A stretch of DNA of 56,730 nt from Octopus bimaculoides (GCF_001194135.2 NC_068981.1:123402793-123459522); one strand, 5' to 3'. Positions 1 through 56,730 are shown, counted from the stretch's first letter. Program-made: numbers and translations. The notes: a model not told the origin generated them from the letters alone.

Positions 1-74
<74 letters not shown>

Positions 75-116
75 TTAATAATAATAATGATAATAATATT
101 AATAATAATAATAATG

Positions 117-174
<58 letters not shown>

Positions 175-225
175 TAATAATGATAATGATAATAATAATA
201 ATTCTTATTATTATCATTATTATTA

Positions 226-293
<68 letters not shown>

Positions 294-3891: not shown

Positions 3892-4668
3892 GCCTATTCA
3901 AAGATTTACAAAACTCTAGTCACCTGGAAAGTACGATTTCCTAACTTCAATGCGCTGGTTGTAGTGATCCAGCTACTTCGTGAAGGCCACAAGGAAATCT
4001 TCCTGAGTGAAGGTATGCCACAGCCTTCTTCACTTTAAAAACGACTTCCCCATGAGGATATCATTCAGCTTGGGGAGCCACTAAAAGTCACTGTGAGTCA
4101 CGTGGGGACGGTAGAGATGGTAAGGGGCATGTATTGATGCCCCCTTCAGTGGAGTAGTTGTTAATAGAATGCTTGTTACTGAGCAGCATTCGAACAAATT
4201 TTGCACAACATTTGCGCATGCTCATGTCTTCATGAATAATTATGTGTACAGTTGTCACCTCAACTCCAAACTGTATACATTTGTGTTTATAAACACACGT
4301 CACTAGTCGTATAGAAAATTCCAAATATCTCCTCCAGACCACATATTCAGACGTCTCTTTCATTACAACGCTTTTCATCGTATTATGCCTCTACTTTAGG
4401 GTGCTTGAATATCTTGCACCACCGAAAACGTTAATCCATAAGCAGTCTGGAATATTTGATAAGTTTCTGTAGTGCTTTTTCCCCAGATTAACAGAAACCT
4501 GTATTGCATAGTGAACTCCCAAATGTTCCGACATGATTCTGAAATATATTCCATAGGATGTGTTCAAATTGCTGTTACAAGCGTCTCCTTCAATATGATA
4601 ACAATAATCTACGACAGCTATAGCTGTTTCTCCTAAAAGAAAAGCTGAAGTCTTCTGGAATATACCTC
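3892..4668 (-). mobile_element. Second mariner remnant, internally deleted
   Basis: Minus-strand pieces: HYAIQVSVNLGKSTTETYQIFQTAYG (N-terminus), VHIIIHEDMSMRKCCAKFV, and C-terminal QEDFLVAFTK*LDHYNQRIEVRKSYFPGD* ending at 3916 (YFEGD-like). Confidence 0.8.
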
Positions 4669-4669
4669 C

Positions 4670-4681
<12 letters not shown>

Positions 4682-4741
<60 letters not shown>
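4682..4741. repeat. (GT)n microsatellite
   Basis: Read directly. Confidence 0.97.
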
Positions 4742-4743
<2 letters not shown>

Positions 4744-4756
4744 TGCGAGTGCATGC

Positions 4757-4841
4757 GATATTTAAACTCAGAACGTAAAGACGGATGAAATACCGATAAG
4801 CATTGTGCCCGGCGTGTTAAAGATTCTTGCAGCTCGCCCCC
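4757..4841 (-). mobile_element. SINE family A head fragment
   Basis: aactcagaacgtaaagacggatgaaataccgataagcatt...ccggcgtg matches family A reverse complement. Confidence 0.8.
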
Positions 4842-5488
4842 GTAATCACAACTGAAATAATAACAGTTTATAGCATACTAAACGTGACAGAAAATTCGAG
4901 GGAGGGTCTAGTGTATTCTGCCTAACTCAGTACTGGGCTGCTACTTTCATTGACACGGAAAGACTGCAAAATAAAGCTGGTTCATCAACTGGATCGGTCA
5001 AAATTCAGTGGTCAAAATGACACTTGATTAGTAATCCGGGATAGCTGAATAGGGTGTCATGTTGAAAGACTGTTATTGTGTGTGATACGAATAAGACTAT
5101 GATCGACTGTTTCTTTTGCGAAGTTTTGACAGTGTTTTCCCCTGACTGTCGAGTGTTGATAAACAGTAGTAAATATAAACGATAACATATTTAAAGGTTC
5201 TTAGAACAGGCTATGTTTTTCTTGGAAACGTCATTAAATGACATTCAGTGTACATGTTGCACAGCAAAATCCTGCTTTCCAGTTAATATGATGAAAGTTG
5301 GATGAGAGTTACCAGACACCTACAGGTGGGTATATATAGTCCCAATTATTATACTGTATATTCACATATTCAGTATACGGAGAAGATTATTGTTGAGTAA
5401 CATGATTTGCGCTATATATTATATCATATTATATTATACATACATACATACATACATACATACGTACATACATACATATATATATATA

Positions 5489-9581: not shown

Positions 9582-11152
9582 TTTAATTTAGTATTACGTA
9601 GAATGTTAATTAAATAATTATGAAATCGAGTCAGTATTGTCTGAAATCCGAATTATAAATTATTGAATTAGATAAAATACTCTCACATACATGTAATTTT
9701 TGGGCGATAATTGTTTTAATTGCTGCCTTCACACAACAATATCAGTTACTTCAAAACAATGTTTTATCATCTACATGAAATGATTAATAATTATTTAAAT
9801 GGCGTCATATTTCCTGCCCATAATTCTAATTTTGTCTGTTAGGATTGATAGGAATGGACGTAAAGAGATTGCTTATTTTTTAAACAAGAGTGCATTTTGC
9901 ACCAAAAGGCCAATATGAATATTTCTCTCGTGGTAACTACGCAGTAAAATGTGTTCTAACAGAACATCCACATTTAAGTAAGAATAAATATTACCTCTTG
10001 GTATGAATACAGCCACAGTTGCTAATAAATATTTTTAAACAAGATAACTGCCTAATCGCGATACCAGCGCATGTTCTGGCATTGTCAGTCTATATATCGC
10101 TGGTAGGGAGATAAGTCACTGCTATCTTTAGTTGTCGAGCTACCATCATTGACAAATCCTACGAAGGTCAAAATCATGTGATATGGTGTTTTTGGTGCTA
10201 GAGGTGGCGGGGTTGTTATTCACGAGCAACAACCTTTTCCAACTACCGCTTTTCCGAAGGTCATCAAGAAACTGTTTTCATTCCGAAATATAGAAATACA
10301 AGGTAAAACTGCAGCATTGTTCTCTTTTCTTTTGCTTTAGTAGTTTACTTTGTACCTTCTCGCATCGTTTCAGTCTTACACAACTACATTCTTTAAATCT
10401 ATACCTCAAAATGCTTCACCAAAAGTCGCTGATGTTATATATATATATACAATCAAACCTTGGGAGAGGCATTATGCCGGTAATAAACACACGCACTGTN
10501 NNNNNNNNNNNNNNNNNNNNNNNNNNNNNNNNNNNNNNNNNNNNNNNNNNNNNNNNNNNNNNNNNNNNNNNNNNNNNNNNNNNNNNNNNNNNNNNNNNNN
10601 NNNNNNNNNNNNNNNNNNNNNNNNNNNNNNNNNNNNNNNNNNNNNNNNNNNNNNNNNNNNNNNNNNNNNNNNNNNNNNNNNNNNNNNNNNNNNNNNNNNN
10701 NNNNNNNNNNNNNNNNNNNNNNNNNNNNNNNNNNNNNNNNNNNNNNNNNNNNNNNNNNNNNNNNNNNNNNNNNNNNNNNNNNNNNNNNNNNNNNNNNNNN
10801 NNNNNNNNNNNNNNNNNNNNNNNNNNNNNNNNNNNNNNNNNNNNNNNNNNNNNNNNNNNNNNNNNNNNNNNNNNNNNNNNNNNNNNNNNNNNNNNNNNNN
10901 NNNNNNNNNNNNNNNNNNNNNNNNNNNNNNNNNNNNNNNNNNNNNNNNNNNNNNNNNNNNNNNNNNNNNNNNNNNNNNNNNNNNNNNNNNNNNNNNNNNN
11001 NNNNNNNNNNNNNNNNNNNNNNNNNNNNNNNNNNNNNNNGTCTTCCACAAAGGTTAGTGACTTTCTGATAAACAATGTACAACTATTTTAAAAATAATAT
11101 ATAAAGAAATCTTTGTTAAACTTGGTAAAGTGTACCAAATAATTTTCAGGAA

Positions 11153-11259: not shown

Positions 11260-12070
11260 ATCACACACAACACACAAAACCACAATATGAAACTAACTGT
11301 TCATGCAAGGATAAAAATTTGTACCCGCTAAATGAAGCTGCATGTCCGAGACCATCATCTATGAAGCCACCGTGGACTCTATATCCACTAAGGACACAGT
11401 CTCGACGAAGAAATACGTGGGCCTTACAGAGGGTTATTTCAAGGCCAGATTCAACAATCATACCTTGAGCTTCAGGCACTGGGATAAAAGGAAAACGACC
11501 AAATTATCCAGTCATATATGGTCCTTAAAAGATAATGGTGTCAGTTACAACATCTACTGGAAGATCTTAGCCAAGTGTAAACCCTACACCAACGGCAGCA
11601 GAAAGTGCGGTCTTTGTGATATGGAAAGATGGCTCATCTGCAAAGGCAGCTTAGATCCGGCCACATGCCTAAATTCAATAACTGAACTTTTCGGATCATG
11701 TCCACATGTGGCTAAATATTTGTGGATATATATATGTAATTTTTTTGTCGAATGTGCGGGTGAGCATGTGTGTGTTTTAAGTGAGAGTGGATGAGTATAT
11801 ATACATAGGCACATGTATGTGCATGTATGGACTGGTGCGCTTACGCAAATACTATGGACATTTTTACTCTTTTACCTTTACTCCCTTCCCTCACTTAGCG
11901 GTCATTCTAATAGCTCTTTTGTCATAATAACGGTCAACCACACAGTAAATTCCCTTTGTTTACCGGTCATTTTCATAGCATTCTTCGATGGACAGATAAC
12001 TGAAGAGATGGCGACGTGGGTTTCTTCCCCGGCATCCGAAACTCGGAGTTTTATCATGGCTACCGAATAA
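11260..12070 (+). mobile_element. Penelope-like element 3' fragment: GIY-YIG endonuclease plus putative terminal repeat
   Basis: ORF 11342-11794: IIYEATV...KKYVGLTEGYFKARFNNHTLSF...TKLSSHIWSLK...WKIL...CGLC...LN...ELF..C.H, preceded by NCSCKDKNLYPLN. A hammerhead motif follows at 11995-12055. Confidence 0.9.
11995..12055 (+). ncRNA. Minimal type I hammerhead ribozyme motif (Penelope-type)
   Basis: Stem I GATAA (11995-99) pairs with TTATC (12051-55); core CTGAAGA (12000-06); stem II GATG/CATC with an extra C; GAAA (12038-41); near-palindromic stem III ACTC-G-GAGT; GUU cleavage triplet (12048-50). Confidence 0.75.
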
Positions 12071-28750: not shown

Positions 28751-29146
28751 TTTTACTTGTTTCAGTCTTTTGACTGCGGCCATGCTGGAGCACCGCCTTT
28801 AGTCGAAGAAATCGACCCCAGGACTTATTCTTTGGAAGCCTAGTACTTATTCTATCGGTCTCTTTTGCCGAACCACTAAGTTACGGGGACATAAACACAC
28901 CAGCATCGGTTGTCAAGCGATGTTGGGGGGACAAACACAGACATACAAACACACACACACACATACACATATATATACACATATACGACGGGCTTCTTTC
29001 AGTTTCCGTCTACCAAATCCACTCACAAGGCATTGGTCGGCCCGAGGCTATAGTAGAAGGCACTTGCCCAAGATGCCACGCAGTGGGACTGAACCCGGGA
29101 CCATGTGGTTGGTAAGCAAGCTACTTACCACACAGCCACTCCTACG
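28751..29146 (-). mobile_element. SINE family B, full length, CORE-like, with internal (CA)n/(TA)n
   Basis: Reverse complement shows A box tggctgtgtggtaag, B box ggttcagtccc and core-like catcttgggcaagtg, then a microsatellite and 3' domain. Confidence 0.92.
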
Positions 29147-29779
29147 CCCTGTGCGCGCGCGTGAATGTGTGTAAAAACTCCTTCATATACTTGACTGCTT
29201 GAATTGAATCCTCCTTGTTGAGACTTGCTATAACTCCTTCTAATACACTCTCAATTTACCTATTGATATTTGTTTAAGCAATACTTCAATTAATTCTATT
29301 TATTTCCTGTAAACTGCATAGTCAACGCTATTTCAGGTATAAATACAAGCTCTTACAAATTTAAATCAAGTGGAGGTAAATTGAAAACAATATATTAAAA
29401 GCGAAATAATTTAATGATCTTGCGAAATTTAGCAATCACAAATACAATAGTTTCGAATCAAATTGTATTAATCTCAGAATAAATTAAATAGAAGATATTT
29501 TGATAAAACTTAGTAGATGTTTTTTTGTTGTCGTTTTTGAATTGTTTGAAATAACACAAATGGTTTTTAAATCTCAATTGTGTGATTTAGGCCTACAACA
29601 TTGCACTGTATTATCTTTGACGAATGTCAGTCACAATACAGTAATAGGTTGTCTCGAGCTACAAGTTCAAGTTGTATTTTACGATTGTAATACGCGATAA
29701 CAAGCTTTACTCGTACAAAATGCCTCATTTTGAAACACTTACAAGTGACTTATCTGCTGCTGATCAAGGAGGTTTGGCA

Positions 29780-32204: not shown

Positions 32205-32390
32205 TATATGTGTGTGTGTGTGTGTGTCTGTGTGTTTGTGTGTCCCTGTAACGTAGTAGTTTGATAAAAGAGACCAATGGAGTAAGTATTAAGCTTACAA
32301 AAAATGAGTCCTGCGGTCGATTTGTTCGAACAAAGCGGTGCTCCAGCATTGCCGCAGTCAAATGACTGAAACCAATAAAAGAAAAGAATA
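32205..32390 (+). mobile_element. SINE family B, 3' half
   Basis: aaaagagaccaat...gcggtgctccagcattgccgcagtcaaatgactgaaac, following a (GT)n tract. Confidence 0.85.
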
Positions 32391-39963: not shown

Positions 39964-40194
39964 TATAAGTAATTTATTGTATTAACATGAATGCTAGAAA
40001 GCCATATCTTTAAGCTCCACCAACCAATTTCACTACTGATGGAGGAATTCAAAGCTACAAAAGCAAGAGCAATCATCACATTGCTTCTACCTGAGTATGA
40101 GGTCAGAAACAGATGATAAAGTGGGACAAAAAATTGAAACCCCCGAGACCTCTTTCGCTAAAAAAAACCGTAACAGCAAAAAGAATATCCACAT

Positions 40195-40588
40195 ACATAG
40201 GTCTGTGATTAAGAAGCTCGCTTTGCAACCACATAATTCCGGGTTCAATCCCACTACATATGTTTGATGAGTGCTTTCTTCTATAGCCTCCAACCAACGA
40301 ATACCAGTGATGAAATTTAGCTGAAAGAAGCTGCGTGGAAGCCCGTTCTATAACTATGTTTTTGTTTATATGTATGTGTGCATGTCTGTGTATGTTTTCG
40401 TGTATGTGTCTGGCCTCCCATCGCTTGACAATCGGAATTGGTTTGTTTACGTCGCCGTAACTTATCGATTTGGCAAAGGAGGCCGGTAGAATAAGTACCC
40501 GATTTAGTGTTAGACATACACAATTCAAGTCGGGGCCACAGCATTGCTGCCTCTCTAGTGACTTTAAATGGCTTAACGATAAAAGAGA
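40195..40588 (+). mobile_element. SINE family B, full length, diverged
   Basis: Head with B box gggttcaatccc, ttctatagcc, internal GT-rich tract, catcgcttgacaatcgg, gtaactta.cgatttggcaaa. Confidence 0.85.
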
Positions 40589-40789
40589 TTTATAGAGCAA
40601 TAAGCATGTGCACTTAGTATCATTTCAAAAAGAATACTCTTGTATTCTTGTATGTGAATCGTAATAGGGTACAATGTTACCACAAAAGACATTGACAATT
40701 GGTGGTGCAATTAGAGTTACTGGGCGGACGACGGTCACTCTTTTCTATCTTATAGTTCGTCATCAACAAGATCTGCTAGAAAGATACTG

Positions 40790-53164: not shown

Positions 53165-54700
53165 CAATTATAATTCACCATAGAATACAGCAGTAAACAA
53201 CTCCTTTTTCTTGACATCCTAATTAAAATAGTCAATAACCACATCGAAACAGTCATCTTCTACAAACCCACAGATTCTGAACAATACCTATTATTCAACT
53301 CATGCCACCCTAAACACATGAAAATGAATATACCTTATAATCTAGCGAAAAGAATCTGTACCATAGTTTCGGACACTTGTACTCGTGAACGAAGACTTCT
53401 TGAACTCAGATCAAAAGACATTACCCAATATCATTAATAAATGATGGAATTAAACGAGCTAAAGAAATAGATATACGAACATTAAGGGAAGTCAACTGAA
53501 ATACTAAAGCAGACTTAAAAATAGTCCCATACATCTCCACACATAACCCTATAAACAACGAAGACTTTAACATTATCATCCAAAATCTACCCATCCTCAC
53601 AAGAGATAAAACAATGAACAAAATTTTAGGCTCACACAAAATTATCAAAAGCAAAATGCAACCTAAATCATTGAAAAAATATTAACCACCGCAATACTAT
53701 ATCCATTAACAATAGAACCAAAGGTGAAAAAATGTAGTCGACCTAACTGTGGTACTTGCCCCCACCTTTTGGAGGGTTCAAGGTGAAATATTTAAGATTA
53801 AATCAAATTTCACCTGTGCCTCGGAAAATCTAATCTATGCCATTACATGCTTAGGGCGTTGTAATAATTATACTGGCCAAACAGGAATATCACTTCGTCG
53901 AAGAACCACTCTCTACAAAGAGCAAATCCGCCACGCACAATACAGACATATACAGGTCAGTGGACACATTGAAAGGTGTGCGAGGAATCTTAATCCTAAT
54001 TTCCTATTTTTCCCTTCTATCAATGTTCACAGAACACCTCAATACAAGAAAGAATGAATAAAGAAGCAACTTCCTTCAATAACTATCTTCCACAACTAAA
54101 TATGAACACATAACATTATACAAAACACTACTAACATTTCAATTCATACCACTAACACCCATACATCCCATACACCATTCACATTACAGATCTATATCTA
54201 CCCTAATTGCACCAGATCCAGAAATACTTACCTCCCTTACACATAATCTTTTTTACTCCGGGACTAGTTGATTTGACACCGTTCAGTAATTGGTGTGCAT
54301 TCAAAGCAATGATTAATAACATTACGAAATCGGTATGCGTTTTAATCTCTAACAATTCACAATAATGACTTTTATTACTCTTATTCCTACCTCAGTTCAT
54401 CTAATTGTATATATTTATCATTACTTTTCATAAAAAGCCTTTACTTTTTTTGATTTCCAACGTGCATTTTTGCTTATTTTTCTTGTTACTTCCCCCTACA
54501 TTTCCACGTGTATTTTTTATTTTGTTTTTGTAACATATTGCTATGATATATATATATACATATGACGGGATTCTGCGCCCTATTTTCGACTAAAAATTAA
54601 ATACAGAAGGCTGAAAGCACCACTTAGTATGAAAATAATTTCCGAAGTTTCGAAACTGAAACATCATCAATTTATACATAACTTCCAAATTTAGATGTTT
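53160..54700 (+). mobile_element. Penelope-like element (Neptune-like): RT thumb, Cys linker and GIY-YIG, 5'-truncated
   Basis: FTIEYSSKQLLFLDILI...YKPTDSEQYLLFNSCHPKH..NIPYNLAKRICTIVS; KKCSRPNCGTC; FTCASENLIYAITC...YTGQTG.SLRRR. Frameshifted; 3' boundary approximate. Confidence 0.92.
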
Positions 54701-55234: not shown

Positions 55235-55289
<55 letters not shown>

Positions 55290-55311
55290 TATTATTATTT
55301 TTTATTATTAT

Positions 55312-55350
<39 letters not shown>

Positions 55351-55561
55351 AAACAATAATGATGTTGATAATAACAGCAACAACATCGTCAACAAGAACA
55401 AGAGAACCAACAGCAGTAACAATAGTAATTAATAACAAGAACAACAACAACAATAATAATAATAATAATTATTATTATTATTATTATTATTATTATTGTT
55501 ATTATTATTATTATCATTATTATTATTATCATTATTATTATTATTATCATTATTATTATTA
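55235..55561. repeat. Compound microsatellite (TTA)n-(TAG)n-(AAC)n-(AAT)n-(TAT)n
   Basis: Read directly; source of the poly-N/poly-Y ORF. Confidence 0.95.
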
Positions 55562-55564
55562 TAG

Positions 55565-55640
55565 AACTAGGCCAGCAATTTTAAGGAGTCAATAGCCGAC
55601 CACAGTGCTTGGTTGGTACTGCAATTTATCGTCCCTCAAA
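55565..55640 (-). mobile_element. SINE family A 3' fragment
   Basis: aggccagcaatttt...gaccacagtgc...tggtact...tttatcg. Confidence 0.55.
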
Positions 55641-55724
55641 CAGTAGCACTCAAATAATGGGATTGATTGTATCAACTATTCCACACTTCTTCAAACTCCC
55701 AGCGTTGTTTCTGAATAGGAAACC

Positions 55725-55733
55725 ATTATTATT

Positions 55734-55769
<36 letters not shown>

Positions 55770-55780
55770 GCTGTTGTTGC

Positions 55781-55856
<76 letters not shown>
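55725..55856. repeat. (TTG)n(TTA)n tract: 3' tail or target of the Dong-like element
   Basis: Read directly; source of the poly-Leu ORF. Confidence 0.95.
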
Positions 55857-56466
55857 TACTTTTACTCTGCGTGTGTGTTACAATCACTTACCAAGGCACA
55901 CCCAGTATCATGGGGTGAGTAAAGGATAAGAGGTGGTACAGCATGACTGAAAGCTGGGGTGGAGGATTGTCAAGGGCAGTAGTGAAATACCTTCATGTAA
56001 TGCATTACAGGCATTTAAATGGTTAGCGTTTATCTAAGGATGTGGGCAGTACTTGTCAGCACTATATTTTGTATCTTTCTGGGACATGCTGGGATCTTAT
56101 CTAGATGTTTTCTCACATCATTAAGAACACTTACATCTGTTAGTCTTCAAGTATTTTCTTTCGTCTTTAATTATTATGTCTGGTCGATTAGATTGGGTCG
56201 TTTTGTCTGTGTTGACTGGAAAATCCCAGAGGATAGTGACATTTTTATCTTCAACGACTGGCTCAGGATGATGTTCATATCACTAAGCAGGAGTGCTGGT
56301 TTTATAGCGTTTATATATCTTCCAATGTAAATACTGTCCAACCCTATCATGGCGATTTTTGCATTCGTTTGGTGTCAGCACAGGCCATCCCGAGATGAGA
56401 TGGTCAATTGTTCTGTCAAATGTGTCGCAGAATCTGCATCTATGGTCAAAACCGCTTTGAAGAACG
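55857..56466 (-). mobile_element. R4/Dong-clade LINE 3' end (zinc knuckle plus restriction-like endonuclease), 5'-truncated
   Basis: CRFCDTFDRTIDHLISGW...RHDRVGQYLHW; YEHHPEPVVEDKNVTILWDF...NRPDIIIKD; TDVSV; IQNIVLTSTAHILR*TLTI* ending at 56015. (TAA)n on both sides. Confidence 0.92.
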
Positions 56467-56475
56467 TTATTATCA

Positions 56476-56537
<62 letters not shown>

Positions 56538-56555
56538 ATTATTATTATTATTATT
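56467..56555. repeat. (TTA)n tract between two Dong-like elements
   Basis: Read directly. Confidence 0.95.
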
Positions 56556-56730
56556 CAGTAGTTTTATTTTTATAACGTGCTTTCACTTCACTACCGAGCG
56601 CAGCTCTGTGCGCCTTGGGTATGTGCTGTGGTTTGCTGTGGTGCTCTTATGTTTACTGTATTGAAAGTGTTTTGCGTAGAATGTGTGCAGTACCCAGTAG
56701 TGCAATTTTCTGTATGTTATATATATTTGT
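56556..56730 (-). mobile_element. 3' end of a second R4/Dong-clade LINE; continues beyond the window
   Basis: NIYNIQKIALLGTAHILRKTLSIQ* (stop at 56653-55), a 97-bp UTR, then (TAA)n. Confidence 0.9.

What the first reader, a model, noticed from the sequence alone, without database searches (positions are those of the whole stretch)
55725..56730. Two different Dong-like LINE 3' ends stacked in one (TAA)n microsatellite
Seen: on the minus strand, element 2 ends in (TAA)n (56467-555), followed at once by 5'-truncated element 1, which also ends in (TAA)n/(CAA)n (55725-856). Their C-termini are homologous (TAHILR.TL.I) but their 3' UTRs differ (97 versus about 160 bp). Element 1 has a Cys-to-Trp knuckle change and a deletion in the endonuclease. 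Known: R4-clade Dong elements use a restriction-like endonuclease and target TAA repeats. Inference: each insertion regenerates the target, so subfamilies pile up in self-propagating arrays and feed (TAA)n abundance.
Basis: partly seen in the sequence, partly recalled or inferred. Interest (0 to 1): 0.75.

Follow-up and report, generated by a model that had tools for sequence, protein, structure and literature searches.

The report
Two dead Dong LINEs in TAA repeat
Two broken copies of two different Dong-type jumping genes sit head to tail inside one TAA microsatellite; this is the known behaviour of this family, and the only possibly new detail is a small RNA hairpin that both copies share just before their TAA tails.

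Summary
On the minus strand, element 2 (last 25 codons, stop, 97-nt 3' UTR) ends in about 30 TAA units. Next comes 5'-truncated, dead element 1, with a 158-nt 3' UTR and a (TAA)25/(CAA)n tail.

The interpretation as R4/Dong-clade LINEs with a restriction-like endonuclease (RLE) is now tested. Full-length relatives match published Dong references best (370-625 bits), then R4 (204-260 bits); R2, NeSL, Utopia and HERO score 143 bits or less. They group with Dong plus R4 in 196 of 200 bootstraps.

Relatives from starfish, sea cucumber, coral, hydrozoan and shrimp all end in (TAA)n (14 of 14). Seven of 14 also have a perfect TAA run at the 5' junction, against a 2% background. TAA is therefore the target, not only a tail. 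Head-to-tail stacks recur in three other loci.

All of this is already published for Dong, so interest is low. The claim that Dong feeds TAA abundance is untested; four of six TAA arrays in the window show no Dong hallmark.

One addition: the two 3' UTRs cannot be aligned, yet both carry a 33-nt covarying hairpin 32-36 nt before the tail. The hairpin is conserved across phyla and is absent from Rfam.

The parts
56653..56730 (-). Element 2: last 25 codons plus stop of a Dong-type ORF (..QKIALLGTAHILRKTLSIQ*). The frame is open and is cut by the window edge.
   Evidence: tblastn to Dong-like relatives gives 65-80% identity over 19-24 aa.
56556..56652 (-). Element 2 3' UTR, 97 nt.
   Evidence: No similarity to the element 1 UTR above shuffled controls.
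56590..56623 (-). Element 2 copy of the conserved 3' UTR hairpin (inner stem 6/6 pairs, outer stem 4/6). It lies 36 nt upstream of the TAA tail.
   Evidence: Second-best hit of covariance model R1 in the whole window: 15.2 bits, E about 0.1. R1 was built only from other species. Fold; pair counts.
56467..56555 (-). (TAA) array of 29.7 units, 95% pure. It is both the tail of element 2 and the 5' flank of element 1.
56015..56466 (-). Element 1: 5'-truncated, dead ORF remnant. It keeps the CCHC knuckle (with Cys changed to Trp), RHD and the RPD part of the RLE. The RLE core is deleted at 56126-56111. It has three in-frame stops and a frame shift, and ends ..TSTAHILR*TLTI*.
   Evidence: 78.8% aa and 83% nt identity to P0055/L003.
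55857..56014 (-). Element 1 3' UTR, 158 nt.
   Evidence: Its last 75 nt or so are 77% conserved with copies from Penaeus indicus and Clytia.
55887..55919 (-). Element 1 copy of the conserved hairpin, decayed (9/12 pairs). It lies 32 nt upstream of the TAA tail.
   Evidence: Best hit of model R1 in the window: 16.3 bits, E about 0.05. Pair counts.
55783..55856 (-). (TAA) array of 24.7 units, 100% pure: the tail of element 1.
55724..55784 (-). (CAA/CAG)n run ending in a few TAA units: a variant part of the same microsatellite.
55563..55723 (-). Unique segment of about 160 bp of unknown origin, itself followed by (TAA)n. It is not shown to be part of a Dong element.
   Evidence: No other copy in the window, no Dong-like coding similarity, no R1 hairpin hit.
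55237..55562 (-). Rest of the compound trinucleotide tract: (TAA)31 imperfect, inverted (TTA/TTG)n, (CTA)12.7, (TAA)25.

Best explanation
The locus holds relics of two separate retrotranspositions by two lineages of Dong-type LINEs. These belong to the R4 clade and have a single ORF: an N-terminal helical DNA-binding-like domain, a reverse transcriptase (RT), a linker, a CCHC knuckle and a restriction-like endonuclease (RLE).

Proposed mechanism:
- The element protein nicks a (TAA)n/(TTA)n tract.
- The (UAA)n end of the element RNA pairs with the nicked target, and reverse transcription starts there.
- Every copy therefore ends in TAA and has the same orientation as the array.
- Reverse transcription often stops early, which gives 5'-truncated copies whose 5' junction is also TAA.
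- The tail of an inserted copy is itself target sequence, so a later insertion can land directly upstream or downstream. This gives a head-to-tail stack.

Element 1 is an old, dead copy. It has a knuckle Cys-to-Trp change, three stops, a frame shift and a deleted RLE core. What is visible of element 2 is intact.

Both RNAs carried a conserved two-stem hairpin 32-36 nt before the tail. I infer that this is the handle by which the reverse transcriptase picks its template.

Shown: the anatomy, the clade, TAA on both flanks in relatives, recurrent stacking, and covariation in the hairpin. Inferred: the nick site, tail-target pairing, the role of the hairpin and the order of the two insertions.
For: Anatomy.

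RLE identity:
- The C-terminal profile aligns to the knuckle and to KPD..VDV..EK..KYK of R2 structures 9nl3 and 9dou.
- Full-length relative P0167 is colinear with R2 proteins from RT to RLE, E 1e-32 to 9e-38.
- RVT_1 lies in the middle of 1134-1214-aa ORFs.

Clade, using labelled references from supplement 10 of PMC5678591:
- Twelve full-length relatives hit Dong_pol and DongAa at 370-625 bits, R4 at 204-260 bits, and every other reference at 143 bits or less.
- Relatives plus Dong plus R4 are monophyletic in 196 of 200 bootstraps; HERO is separate in 200 of 200.
- P0055, the nearest relative of element 1, hits Dong_pol at E 1e-43, against R2Lp at 4e-08.

Target:
- Full-length L004 lies between (TAA)n at 133-464 and at 4640-5029.
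- The Penaeus indicus copy follows about 3.7 kb of degenerate TAA.
- The Asterias and Oculina copies have TAA on both sides.
- 3' tails are TAA in 14 of 14 copies. 5' junctions have a perfect TAA run in 7 of 14, against a 2% background.
- TAA arrays in the relatives' loci are almost all on the same strand as the element.

Stacks: L001, L003, L009.

Hairpin:
- 93.5% of cells paired, against 67.4 +/- 3.3 in shuffles.
- 9 of 12 pairs show compensatory change; slid controls give 20-47%.
- A model trained without window sequences ranks the two window hairpins first and second in 113 kb. In 261 kb of other loci its only non-training hit is another Dong 3' UTR.

Literature: Dong targets TAA (PMC3812793, PMC1635306, PMC7998251).
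Against: - Neither window copy contains an RT, so clade placement rests on relatives. Element 1 is tied to them by 79% aa identity to P0055; element 2 only by 19-25 residues plus the hairpin.
- The order of insertion, and whether there were two events at all, cannot be read from the sequence.
- Five of 14 relatives have no TAA at the apparent 5' end. Their true 5' ends may be decayed.
- The window E-values of the hairpin model are modest (0.05 and 0.1, with rough calibration). The argument rests on position as well as score.
- No reads were available to confirm the assembly of this repeat-rich stretch.
Confidence: 0.85

Rival explanations
1. One integration event rather than two. The reverse transcriptase copied a truncated RNA of element 1's lineage. 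At that RNA's 5' end it jumped to the (UAA)n 3' end of a second RNA, of element 2's lineage, and laid down both copies in tandem.
For: End-to-end template jumping is an established property of the related R2 reverse transcriptase (my knowledge of Bibillo and Eickbush's work; not checked here). Both copies have the same orientation and are joined only by TAA. Stacks of different subfamilies recur.
Against: The joining array is long (about 89 bp) and impure, like a genomic microsatellite. Element 1 is much more decayed than the visible part of element 2, including its hairpin, which suggests different ages. Same orientation is equally expected from strand-specific target cleavage.
Confidence: 0.1
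2. The two copies inserted at separate TAA arrays and were brought together later, either by unequal crossing-over or deletion between TAA tracts, or by an assembly collapse across microsatellites.
For: The window has seven N gaps and is very rich in simple repeats. TAA tracts are good substrates for recombination and for misassembly.
Against: There are no gaps between 55237 and 56730. The same head-to-tail pattern is seen in four independent assemblies, including long-contig ones.
Confidence: 0.07
3. These are ordinary LINEs without target specificity. They merely carry a (TAA)n tail, and the adjacency is a chance nested insertion.
For: Many LINEs end in short tandem repeats. Five of 14 relatives lack TAA at the apparent 5' end.
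Against: Seven perfect plus two imperfect TAA 5' junctions out of 14, against a 2% background; the binomial probability of seven or more is about 4e-9, my arithmetic from the figures. Both full-length relatives are embedded in TAA arrays. The literature on Dong agrees (PMC3812793, PMC7998251).
Confidence: 0.03
4. The elements belong to the HERO clade, some of whose families also target microsatellites, rather than to R4/Dong.
For: PMC4640811 notes that some HERO families are specific for microsatellites.
Against: HERO references score below R2, NeSL and Utopia against every relative tested. HERO forms a separate clade in 200 of 200 bootstraps.
Confidence: 0.02

Closest known systems
Dong (Bombyx mori) and its relatives DongAa/DongAg (mosquitoes) and DongBg (the snail Biomphalaria glabrata); also the Dong consensus reported in the Octopus bimaculoides repeat library (PMC9115989)
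   Same: Single ORF with RT, linker, CCHC knuckle and RLE. Insertion into (TAA)n. No N-terminal zinc fingers. RT-linker 33-49% identical to Dong_pol and DongAa, which are the best hits for all relatives tested. Distribution in insects, molluscs and cnidarians as stated in PMC7998251.
   Different: The window copies are two diverged subfamilies, both incomplete. The relatives found here extend to echinoderms (Asterias, Holothuria), a coral and a hydrozoan. The 3' UTR hairpin was not found described in the papers I could search.
R4 (Ascaris; rDNA-specific)
   Same: Same clade (196 of 200 bootstraps with Dong and the relatives). Same domain order.
   Different: R4 targets 28S rDNA, not TAA. It scores only 204-260 bits, against 370-625 bits for Dong.
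R2 (28S rDNA LINE; solved structures 8gh6, 9dou, 9nl2-4)
   Same: Colinear from RT to RLE. The knuckle and the PD..D..K motif align. Target-primed reverse transcription. A structured 3' UTR is recognised by the protein (established for R2).
   Different: R2 has N-terminal zinc fingers plus Myb and a different target. It is much more distant (143 bits or less).
Rex6 (fish; R4 clade)
   Same: Listed with Dong as inserting in TAA repeats (PMC1635306).
   Different: No reference sequence was available, so it was not compared.
Stringent-type LINEs of the L2 clade such as eel UnaL2 (my recollection; not checked here)
   Same: A conserved 3' stem-loop followed by a short tandem-repeat tail that serves in template recognition and priming.
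   Different: These are LINEs with an apurinic/apyrimidinic-type endonuclease (APE), are unrelated in sequence, and do not target the repeat they end in.

Membership tests
RLE-bearing non-LTR retrotransposons (CRE, R2, R4, NeSL, HERO) | RT followed by a linker, a CCHC knuckle and a PD-(D/E)XK endonuclease at the C-terminus | tested here: met
   Relatives: RVT_1 lies in mid-ORF; the profile aligns to the knuckle and RLE of R2 structures; P0167 is colinear with R2 proteins. In the window, element 1 keeps the knuckle (Cys changed to Trp), RHD and RPD but has lost the D and K part. Element 2 shows only the C-terminal tail.
R4/Dong clade | RT-linker sequence groups with Dong and R4 references | tested here: met
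   Met through relatives only, because the window copies have no RT. Dong_pol and DongAa are the best hits for 12 of 12 full-length relatives. They form a clade with Dong plus R4 in 196 of 200 bootstraps. P0055, the nearest relative of element 1, hits Dong_pol at E 1e-43.
R4/Dong clade (Dong lineage) | Insertion into (TAA)n, with TAA on both flanks | tested here: met
   Window element 1 has TAA on both sides. In relatives the 3' end is TAA in 14 of 14 copies, and the 5' junction is a perfect TAA run in 7 of 14 plus 2 imperfect, against a 2% background.
R4/Dong clade | N-terminal Myb/SANT-like domain without zinc fingers (PMC7998251) | tested here: inconclusive
   No C2H2 or CCHC-like pattern in the first 450 aa of 48 long relatives. 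A conserved Trp-containing domain is predicted as a confident helical bundle, pLDDT 94.7. The best PDB fold matches are a homeodomain and the PHR1 MYB domain, but with E above 1. HMMER finds no Myb.
R4/Dong clade | HDV-like self-cleaving ribozyme at the 5' end (shown for Dong and R4 in PMC3774820) | tested here: inconclusive
   No Rfam ribozyme hit at the 5' end of full-length L004. Covariance models detect such pseudoknotted ribozymes poorly. The window has no 5' end to test.
HERO clade | RT groups with HERO references | tested here: not met
   HERO references are among the weakest hits and form a separate clade in 200 of 200 bootstraps.
R2 clade | N-terminal zinc finger(s) plus Myb; 28S rDNA target; RT groups with R2 | tested here: not met
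   No N-terminal zinc-finger pattern, a TAA target, and R2 references at 143 bits or less.
LINEs with a 3' stem-loop recognition element | Conserved, covarying stem-loop at a fixed distance from the repeat tail | tested here: met
   Binding by the RT is not testable with these tools.

The most novel reading that the evidence does not exclude
The 33-nt two-stem hairpin (NNNNCC-YNA-GGNNNN-loop-NNNNCC-C-GGNNNN), lying 25-41 nt before the (TAA)n tail, may be the universal cis-signal by which Dong reverse transcriptases choose their template. It is kept by compensatory change from cnidarians to echinoderms, crustaceans and this (probably cephalopod) genome. It is not in Rfam, and I found no description of it in the papers I could search. 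If the reading is right, diverged Dong subfamilies, and possibly short non-autonomous 3' ends, compete for the same enzyme and the same TAA targets. Hairpin plus tail would then be the minimal cargo handle for a microsatellite-targeting insertion system.
Probability: 0.4. Interest if true: 0.5.

Novelty: new member of a known kind. Interest (0 to 1): 0.25.

Why it matters
As a finding it mostly confirms textbook behaviour: Dong LINEs live in TAA microsatellites, including in molluscs, and target-specific LINEs pile up in their target arrays. Its use is as annotation. This stretch is TE debris, not a gene or a regulatory element. It also gives a caution: the TAA richness of this genome cannot be credited to Dong from one locus.

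The hairpin is the one lead worth keeping. RLE LINEs are now being developed as site-specific insertion tools (PMC13580325), and their 3' UTR recognition signal is the part that defines the cargo. A short, phylogenetically proven signal for a whole clade would be directly testable.

Tried and rejected
No reads were laid, so there is no check of the assembly or of transcription.
- Pfam finds nothing in the element 1 translation.
- An exact look-up of a window ORF found no contig, so the window could not be extended past 56730.
- A homologue search with that ORF to name the organism gave one anonymous hit. Rfam and tRNA scans of the window were empty.
- The listing of cluster members gave no useful names for the full-length relatives.
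- The AlphaFold model of the C-terminal domain was poor (pLDDT 50) and was not fold-searched.
- The fold search of the N-terminal domain was not significant. HMMER found no Myb.
- No HDV-like ribozyme was found by Rfam in L004. I did not pursue a manual search.
- I suspected that the roughly 160-bp segment at 55563-55723 was a third, UTR-only Dong copy. It has no hairpin hit and no similarity to anything fetched, so the idea is dropped as unsupported.
- No similarity to Penaeus indicus beyond simple repeats, so the window is not from a close relative of that shrimp.
- The original Dong paper (PMC309301) and PMC4400214 are not held.
- Literature searches for a described Dong 3' stem-loop, or for Dong-driven TAA expansion, found nothing relevant.
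- A first Biopython bootstrap run timed out and was redone with a faster distance routine.

Full report
**1. Observation.**
The description holds at the stated coordinates; everything below is on the minus strand.
- 56730-56653 translates to TNIYNIQKIALLGTAHILRKTLSIQ followed by a stop. A 97-nt UTR (56652-56556) and a (TAA) array of 29.7 units at 95% purity (56555-56467) follow.
- Directly after the array comes a 610-bp fragment (56466-55857). It starts in mid-protein with ..CRFCDTFDRTIDHLISGWPVLTPNECKNRHDRVGQYLHWKI...
- This fragment has two adjacent in-frame stops, then ILWDFPVNTDKTTQSNRPDIIIKD. It then loses the frame and resumes with ..KIQNIVLTSTAHILR*TLTI*.
- Against its closest relative, P0055, it covers residues 235-338 (78.8% identity) and 398-431. 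Residues 339-397 are missing. At DNA level, 151 nt of the relative are replaced by 16 nt.
- The fourth knuckle cysteine is Trp.
- Its 158-nt UTR is followed by a pure (TAA)24.7 array (55856-55783) and by (CAA/CAG)n.
- The two UTRs share no sequence similarity above shuffled controls.
- Nothing else in the window resembles these proteins.
- The stack is the upstream end of a compound trinucleotide tract of about 1.3 kb that reaches 55237.

**2. What the proteins are.**
- Pfam sees nothing in element 1.
- A large-database search finds many 200-430-aa fragments from animal assemblies with the intact consensus ..CRFC....ETIDHLVSGC..L.P.EY..RHDRV....ILWDF.I.TDR.I.ANRPDI.IKD....C.LID...P.D.N...K...K.SKYKDLEIE....W........PVVVGALG....QKIVL..TAHILR..LS.
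- A profile of this domain aligns to the CCHC knuckle and to the KPD..VDV..EK..KYK endonuclease motif of solved R2 proteins. The part deleted in element 1 therefore holds the second acidic residue and the lysine of the restriction-like endonuclease (RLE).
- An exhaustive profile search gave full-length proteins of 1021-1240 aa. They have RVT_1 in the middle and are colinear with R2 proteins from the reverse transcriptase (RT) to the RLE.

**3. Clade.**
- The supplement of PMC5678591 holds a labelled alignment of RLE LINEs: R2, R8, R9, R4, Dong, CRE, HERO, NeSL and Utopia.
- All twelve full-length relatives tested hit Dong_pol and DongAa best (370-625 bits, 33-49% identity over about 590 aa). 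R4 comes next (204-260 bits). Every other reference scores 143 bits or less, and HERO is near the bottom.
- In a neighbour-joining tree (570 columns, 200 bootstraps), relatives plus Dong plus R4 are monophyletic in 196 replicates. HERO is separate in all 200.
- P0055 is 83% identical in DNA to element 1. It hits Dong_pol at E 1e-43, against 4e-08 for the best R2 reference.
- The R4/Dong assignment is therefore met. The caveat is that the window copies have no RT and are tied to the tree only through their C-terminal domain.
- The N-terminus of the relatives has no zinc-finger pattern. It has a conserved Trp-containing domain predicted as a confident helical bundle.
- That picture fits the divergent Myb/SANT domain reported for R4/Dong in PMC7998251. 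My fold and HMM searches did not reach significance, however.

**4. Target and stacking.** I fetched ten loci around relatives.
- A full-length copy (L004) lies between (TAA)n at 133-464 and at 4640-5029.
- A near full-length copy in Penaeus indicus (L005) follows about 3.7 kb of degenerate TAA and is followed by more.
- 5'-truncated copies in Asterias (L002), Oculina (L006) and L009 have TAA on both sides.
- All 14 copies with a readable 3' end finish in TAA.
- Seven of 14 have a perfect (TAA) run of at least 4 units within 40 nt of the 5' junction, and two more have an imperfect run. Only 2% of positions in the same sequences qualify. The binomial probability of seven or more is about 4e-9, by my arithmetic from the figures.
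- TAA arrays in these loci are almost all on the element's strand.
- Head-to-tail stacks of different copies joined only by TAA occur in L001, L003 and L009, the last with three copies in a row.

**5. A shared hairpin.**
- While comparing 3' ends I saw the same two-stem hairpin in unalignable UTRs. It has a 6-bp outer stem ending in CC/GG, a 3-nt bulge, a 6-bp inner stem, a loop of about 5 nt (often TGGGT) and a single bulged C.
- It lies 25-41 nt before the tail.
- On nine sequences from other species, 93.5% of cells pair, against 67.4 +/- 3.3 in shuffles. Nine of 12 pairs show changes on both sides. Slid controls give 20-47%.
- A covariance model built from those nine was run over the whole window with filters off. 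Its two best hits are the hairpins of element 1 (55887-55919, 16.3 bits) and element 2 (56590-56623, 15.2 bits). The next hit is noise at E 3.6.
- In the ten loci, the model's only non-training hit is another Dong 3' UTR.
- Rfam has no matching family.
- In element 1's lineage, the whole last 75 nt or so are 77% conserved between the window, L003, Penaeus indicus and the hydrozoan Clytia.

**6. Mechanism and rivals.**
- The best reading is two target-primed reverse transcription events by two Dong lineages into one TAA tract. The tail of one copy served as target, or as flank, for the other. Element 1 looks older.
- A single event with a template jump, a later recombination, or a misassembly cannot be excluded from the sequence. 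I give these about 0.1, 0.07 (the last two together) and lower.
- The idea that Dong 'feeds' TAA abundance is not tested here. Four of the six TAA arrays in the window have neither Dong coding sequence nor the hairpin.

**7. Context and novelty.**
- That Dong inserts in TAA repeats is published for Bombyx, Anopheles and the snail Biomphalaria (PMC3812793), for 'most insects, mollusks and cnidarians' (PMC7998251) and, with Rex6, in PMC1635306.
- An abundant SINE in the window (28760-29150) matches my recollection of the common octopus SINE. This rests on memory only.
- PMC9115989 reports a full-length Dong in the Octopus bimaculoides repeat library with no sign of recent activity. That fits a decayed copy here.
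- The finding is therefore a correct reading of a known kind. The hairpin is the only part that may be new.

**8. Limits.**
- No reads were available.
- The window could not be extended, and the organism is not established.
- The covariance model's E-values are rough.
- The flank counts come from ten loci chosen by protein similarity, not from a census.

Noticed in passing
window 55887-55919 (-) and 56590-56623 (-); L002 11147-11179, L003 483-515 and 2077-2109, L004 4554-4580, L005 11062-11094, L006 10821-10853, L007 5316-5348, L008 4752-4784, L009 4714-4746, L010 4769-4801: A 33-nt covarying two-stem hairpin lies 25-41 nt upstream of the (TAA)n tail in Dong-like 3' UTRs from several phyla. 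It has no Rfam family.
   Followed up: yes
window 55851-55926 (-); L003 2066-2140; L005 about 11048-11135; L007 about 5305-5390: In element 1's lineage the last 75 nt or so of the 3' UTR (hairpin plus GTGATTGTAA..ATGCAGA..AAAAG) are 77% conserved between this window, a metagenome scaffold, the shrimp Penaeus indicus and the hydrozoan Clytia. That is unusually high for non-coding DNA across phyla. It suggests either strong constraint or horizontal transfer.
   Followed up: partly
window 55563-55723: A unique segment of about 160 bp sits between two TAA arrays, just downstream of element 1's tail. It has no copy elsewhere in the window, no Dong-like coding and no hairpin. Its origin is unknown.
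   Followed up: partly
window 28760-29150 (-); also near 32310 (+) and 40106-40624 (-): Copies of a SINE-like repeat with a tRNA-like head (..GGTCCCGGGTTCAGTCCCACTGCGTGGCA..) and an internal TG/TA microsatellite. It matches my memory of the abundant octopus SINE, which hints at a cephalopod source. The organism is not otherwise established.
   Followed up: partly
window 53728-54054 (+): An open frame with a weak GIY-YIG match (E 0.0055, below Pfam's cut-off). It is possibly the endonuclease end of a Penelope-like element, 1.2 kb from the trinucleotide tract.
   Followed up: partly
window 1-293: A (TAA)67 array abuts an inverted (TTA)31 array, forming a palindromic microsatellite at the window start with no Dong hallmark beside it. 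A similar inversion of orientation occurs at 55417-55469.
   Followed up: no
L005 3454-7128 and 11211-12270 (Penaeus indicus, JAGYIC010000007.1): A near full-length Dong-like copy is preceded by about 3.7 kb of degenerate TAA repeats with embedded (CAA)n runs, like the (CAA)n run after element 1 in the window.
   Followed up: partly
L009 520-1279, 2371-3603, 3833-4636: Three Dong-like copies lie in a row on one strand, each ending in a TAA array. A further RVT_1 gene follows right after the last array.
   Followed up: partly
L001 5815-6495 (-): Another C-terminal domain of RLE type with a different motif set (..RPDL..LELTVGFE.N..). It belongs to a different LINE family and lies next to the Dong copies.
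   Followed up: no
window 11342-11794 (+): A 150-aa ATG-started ORF with no Pfam match and only one anonymous homologue. It is probably TE-derived.
   Followed up: partly
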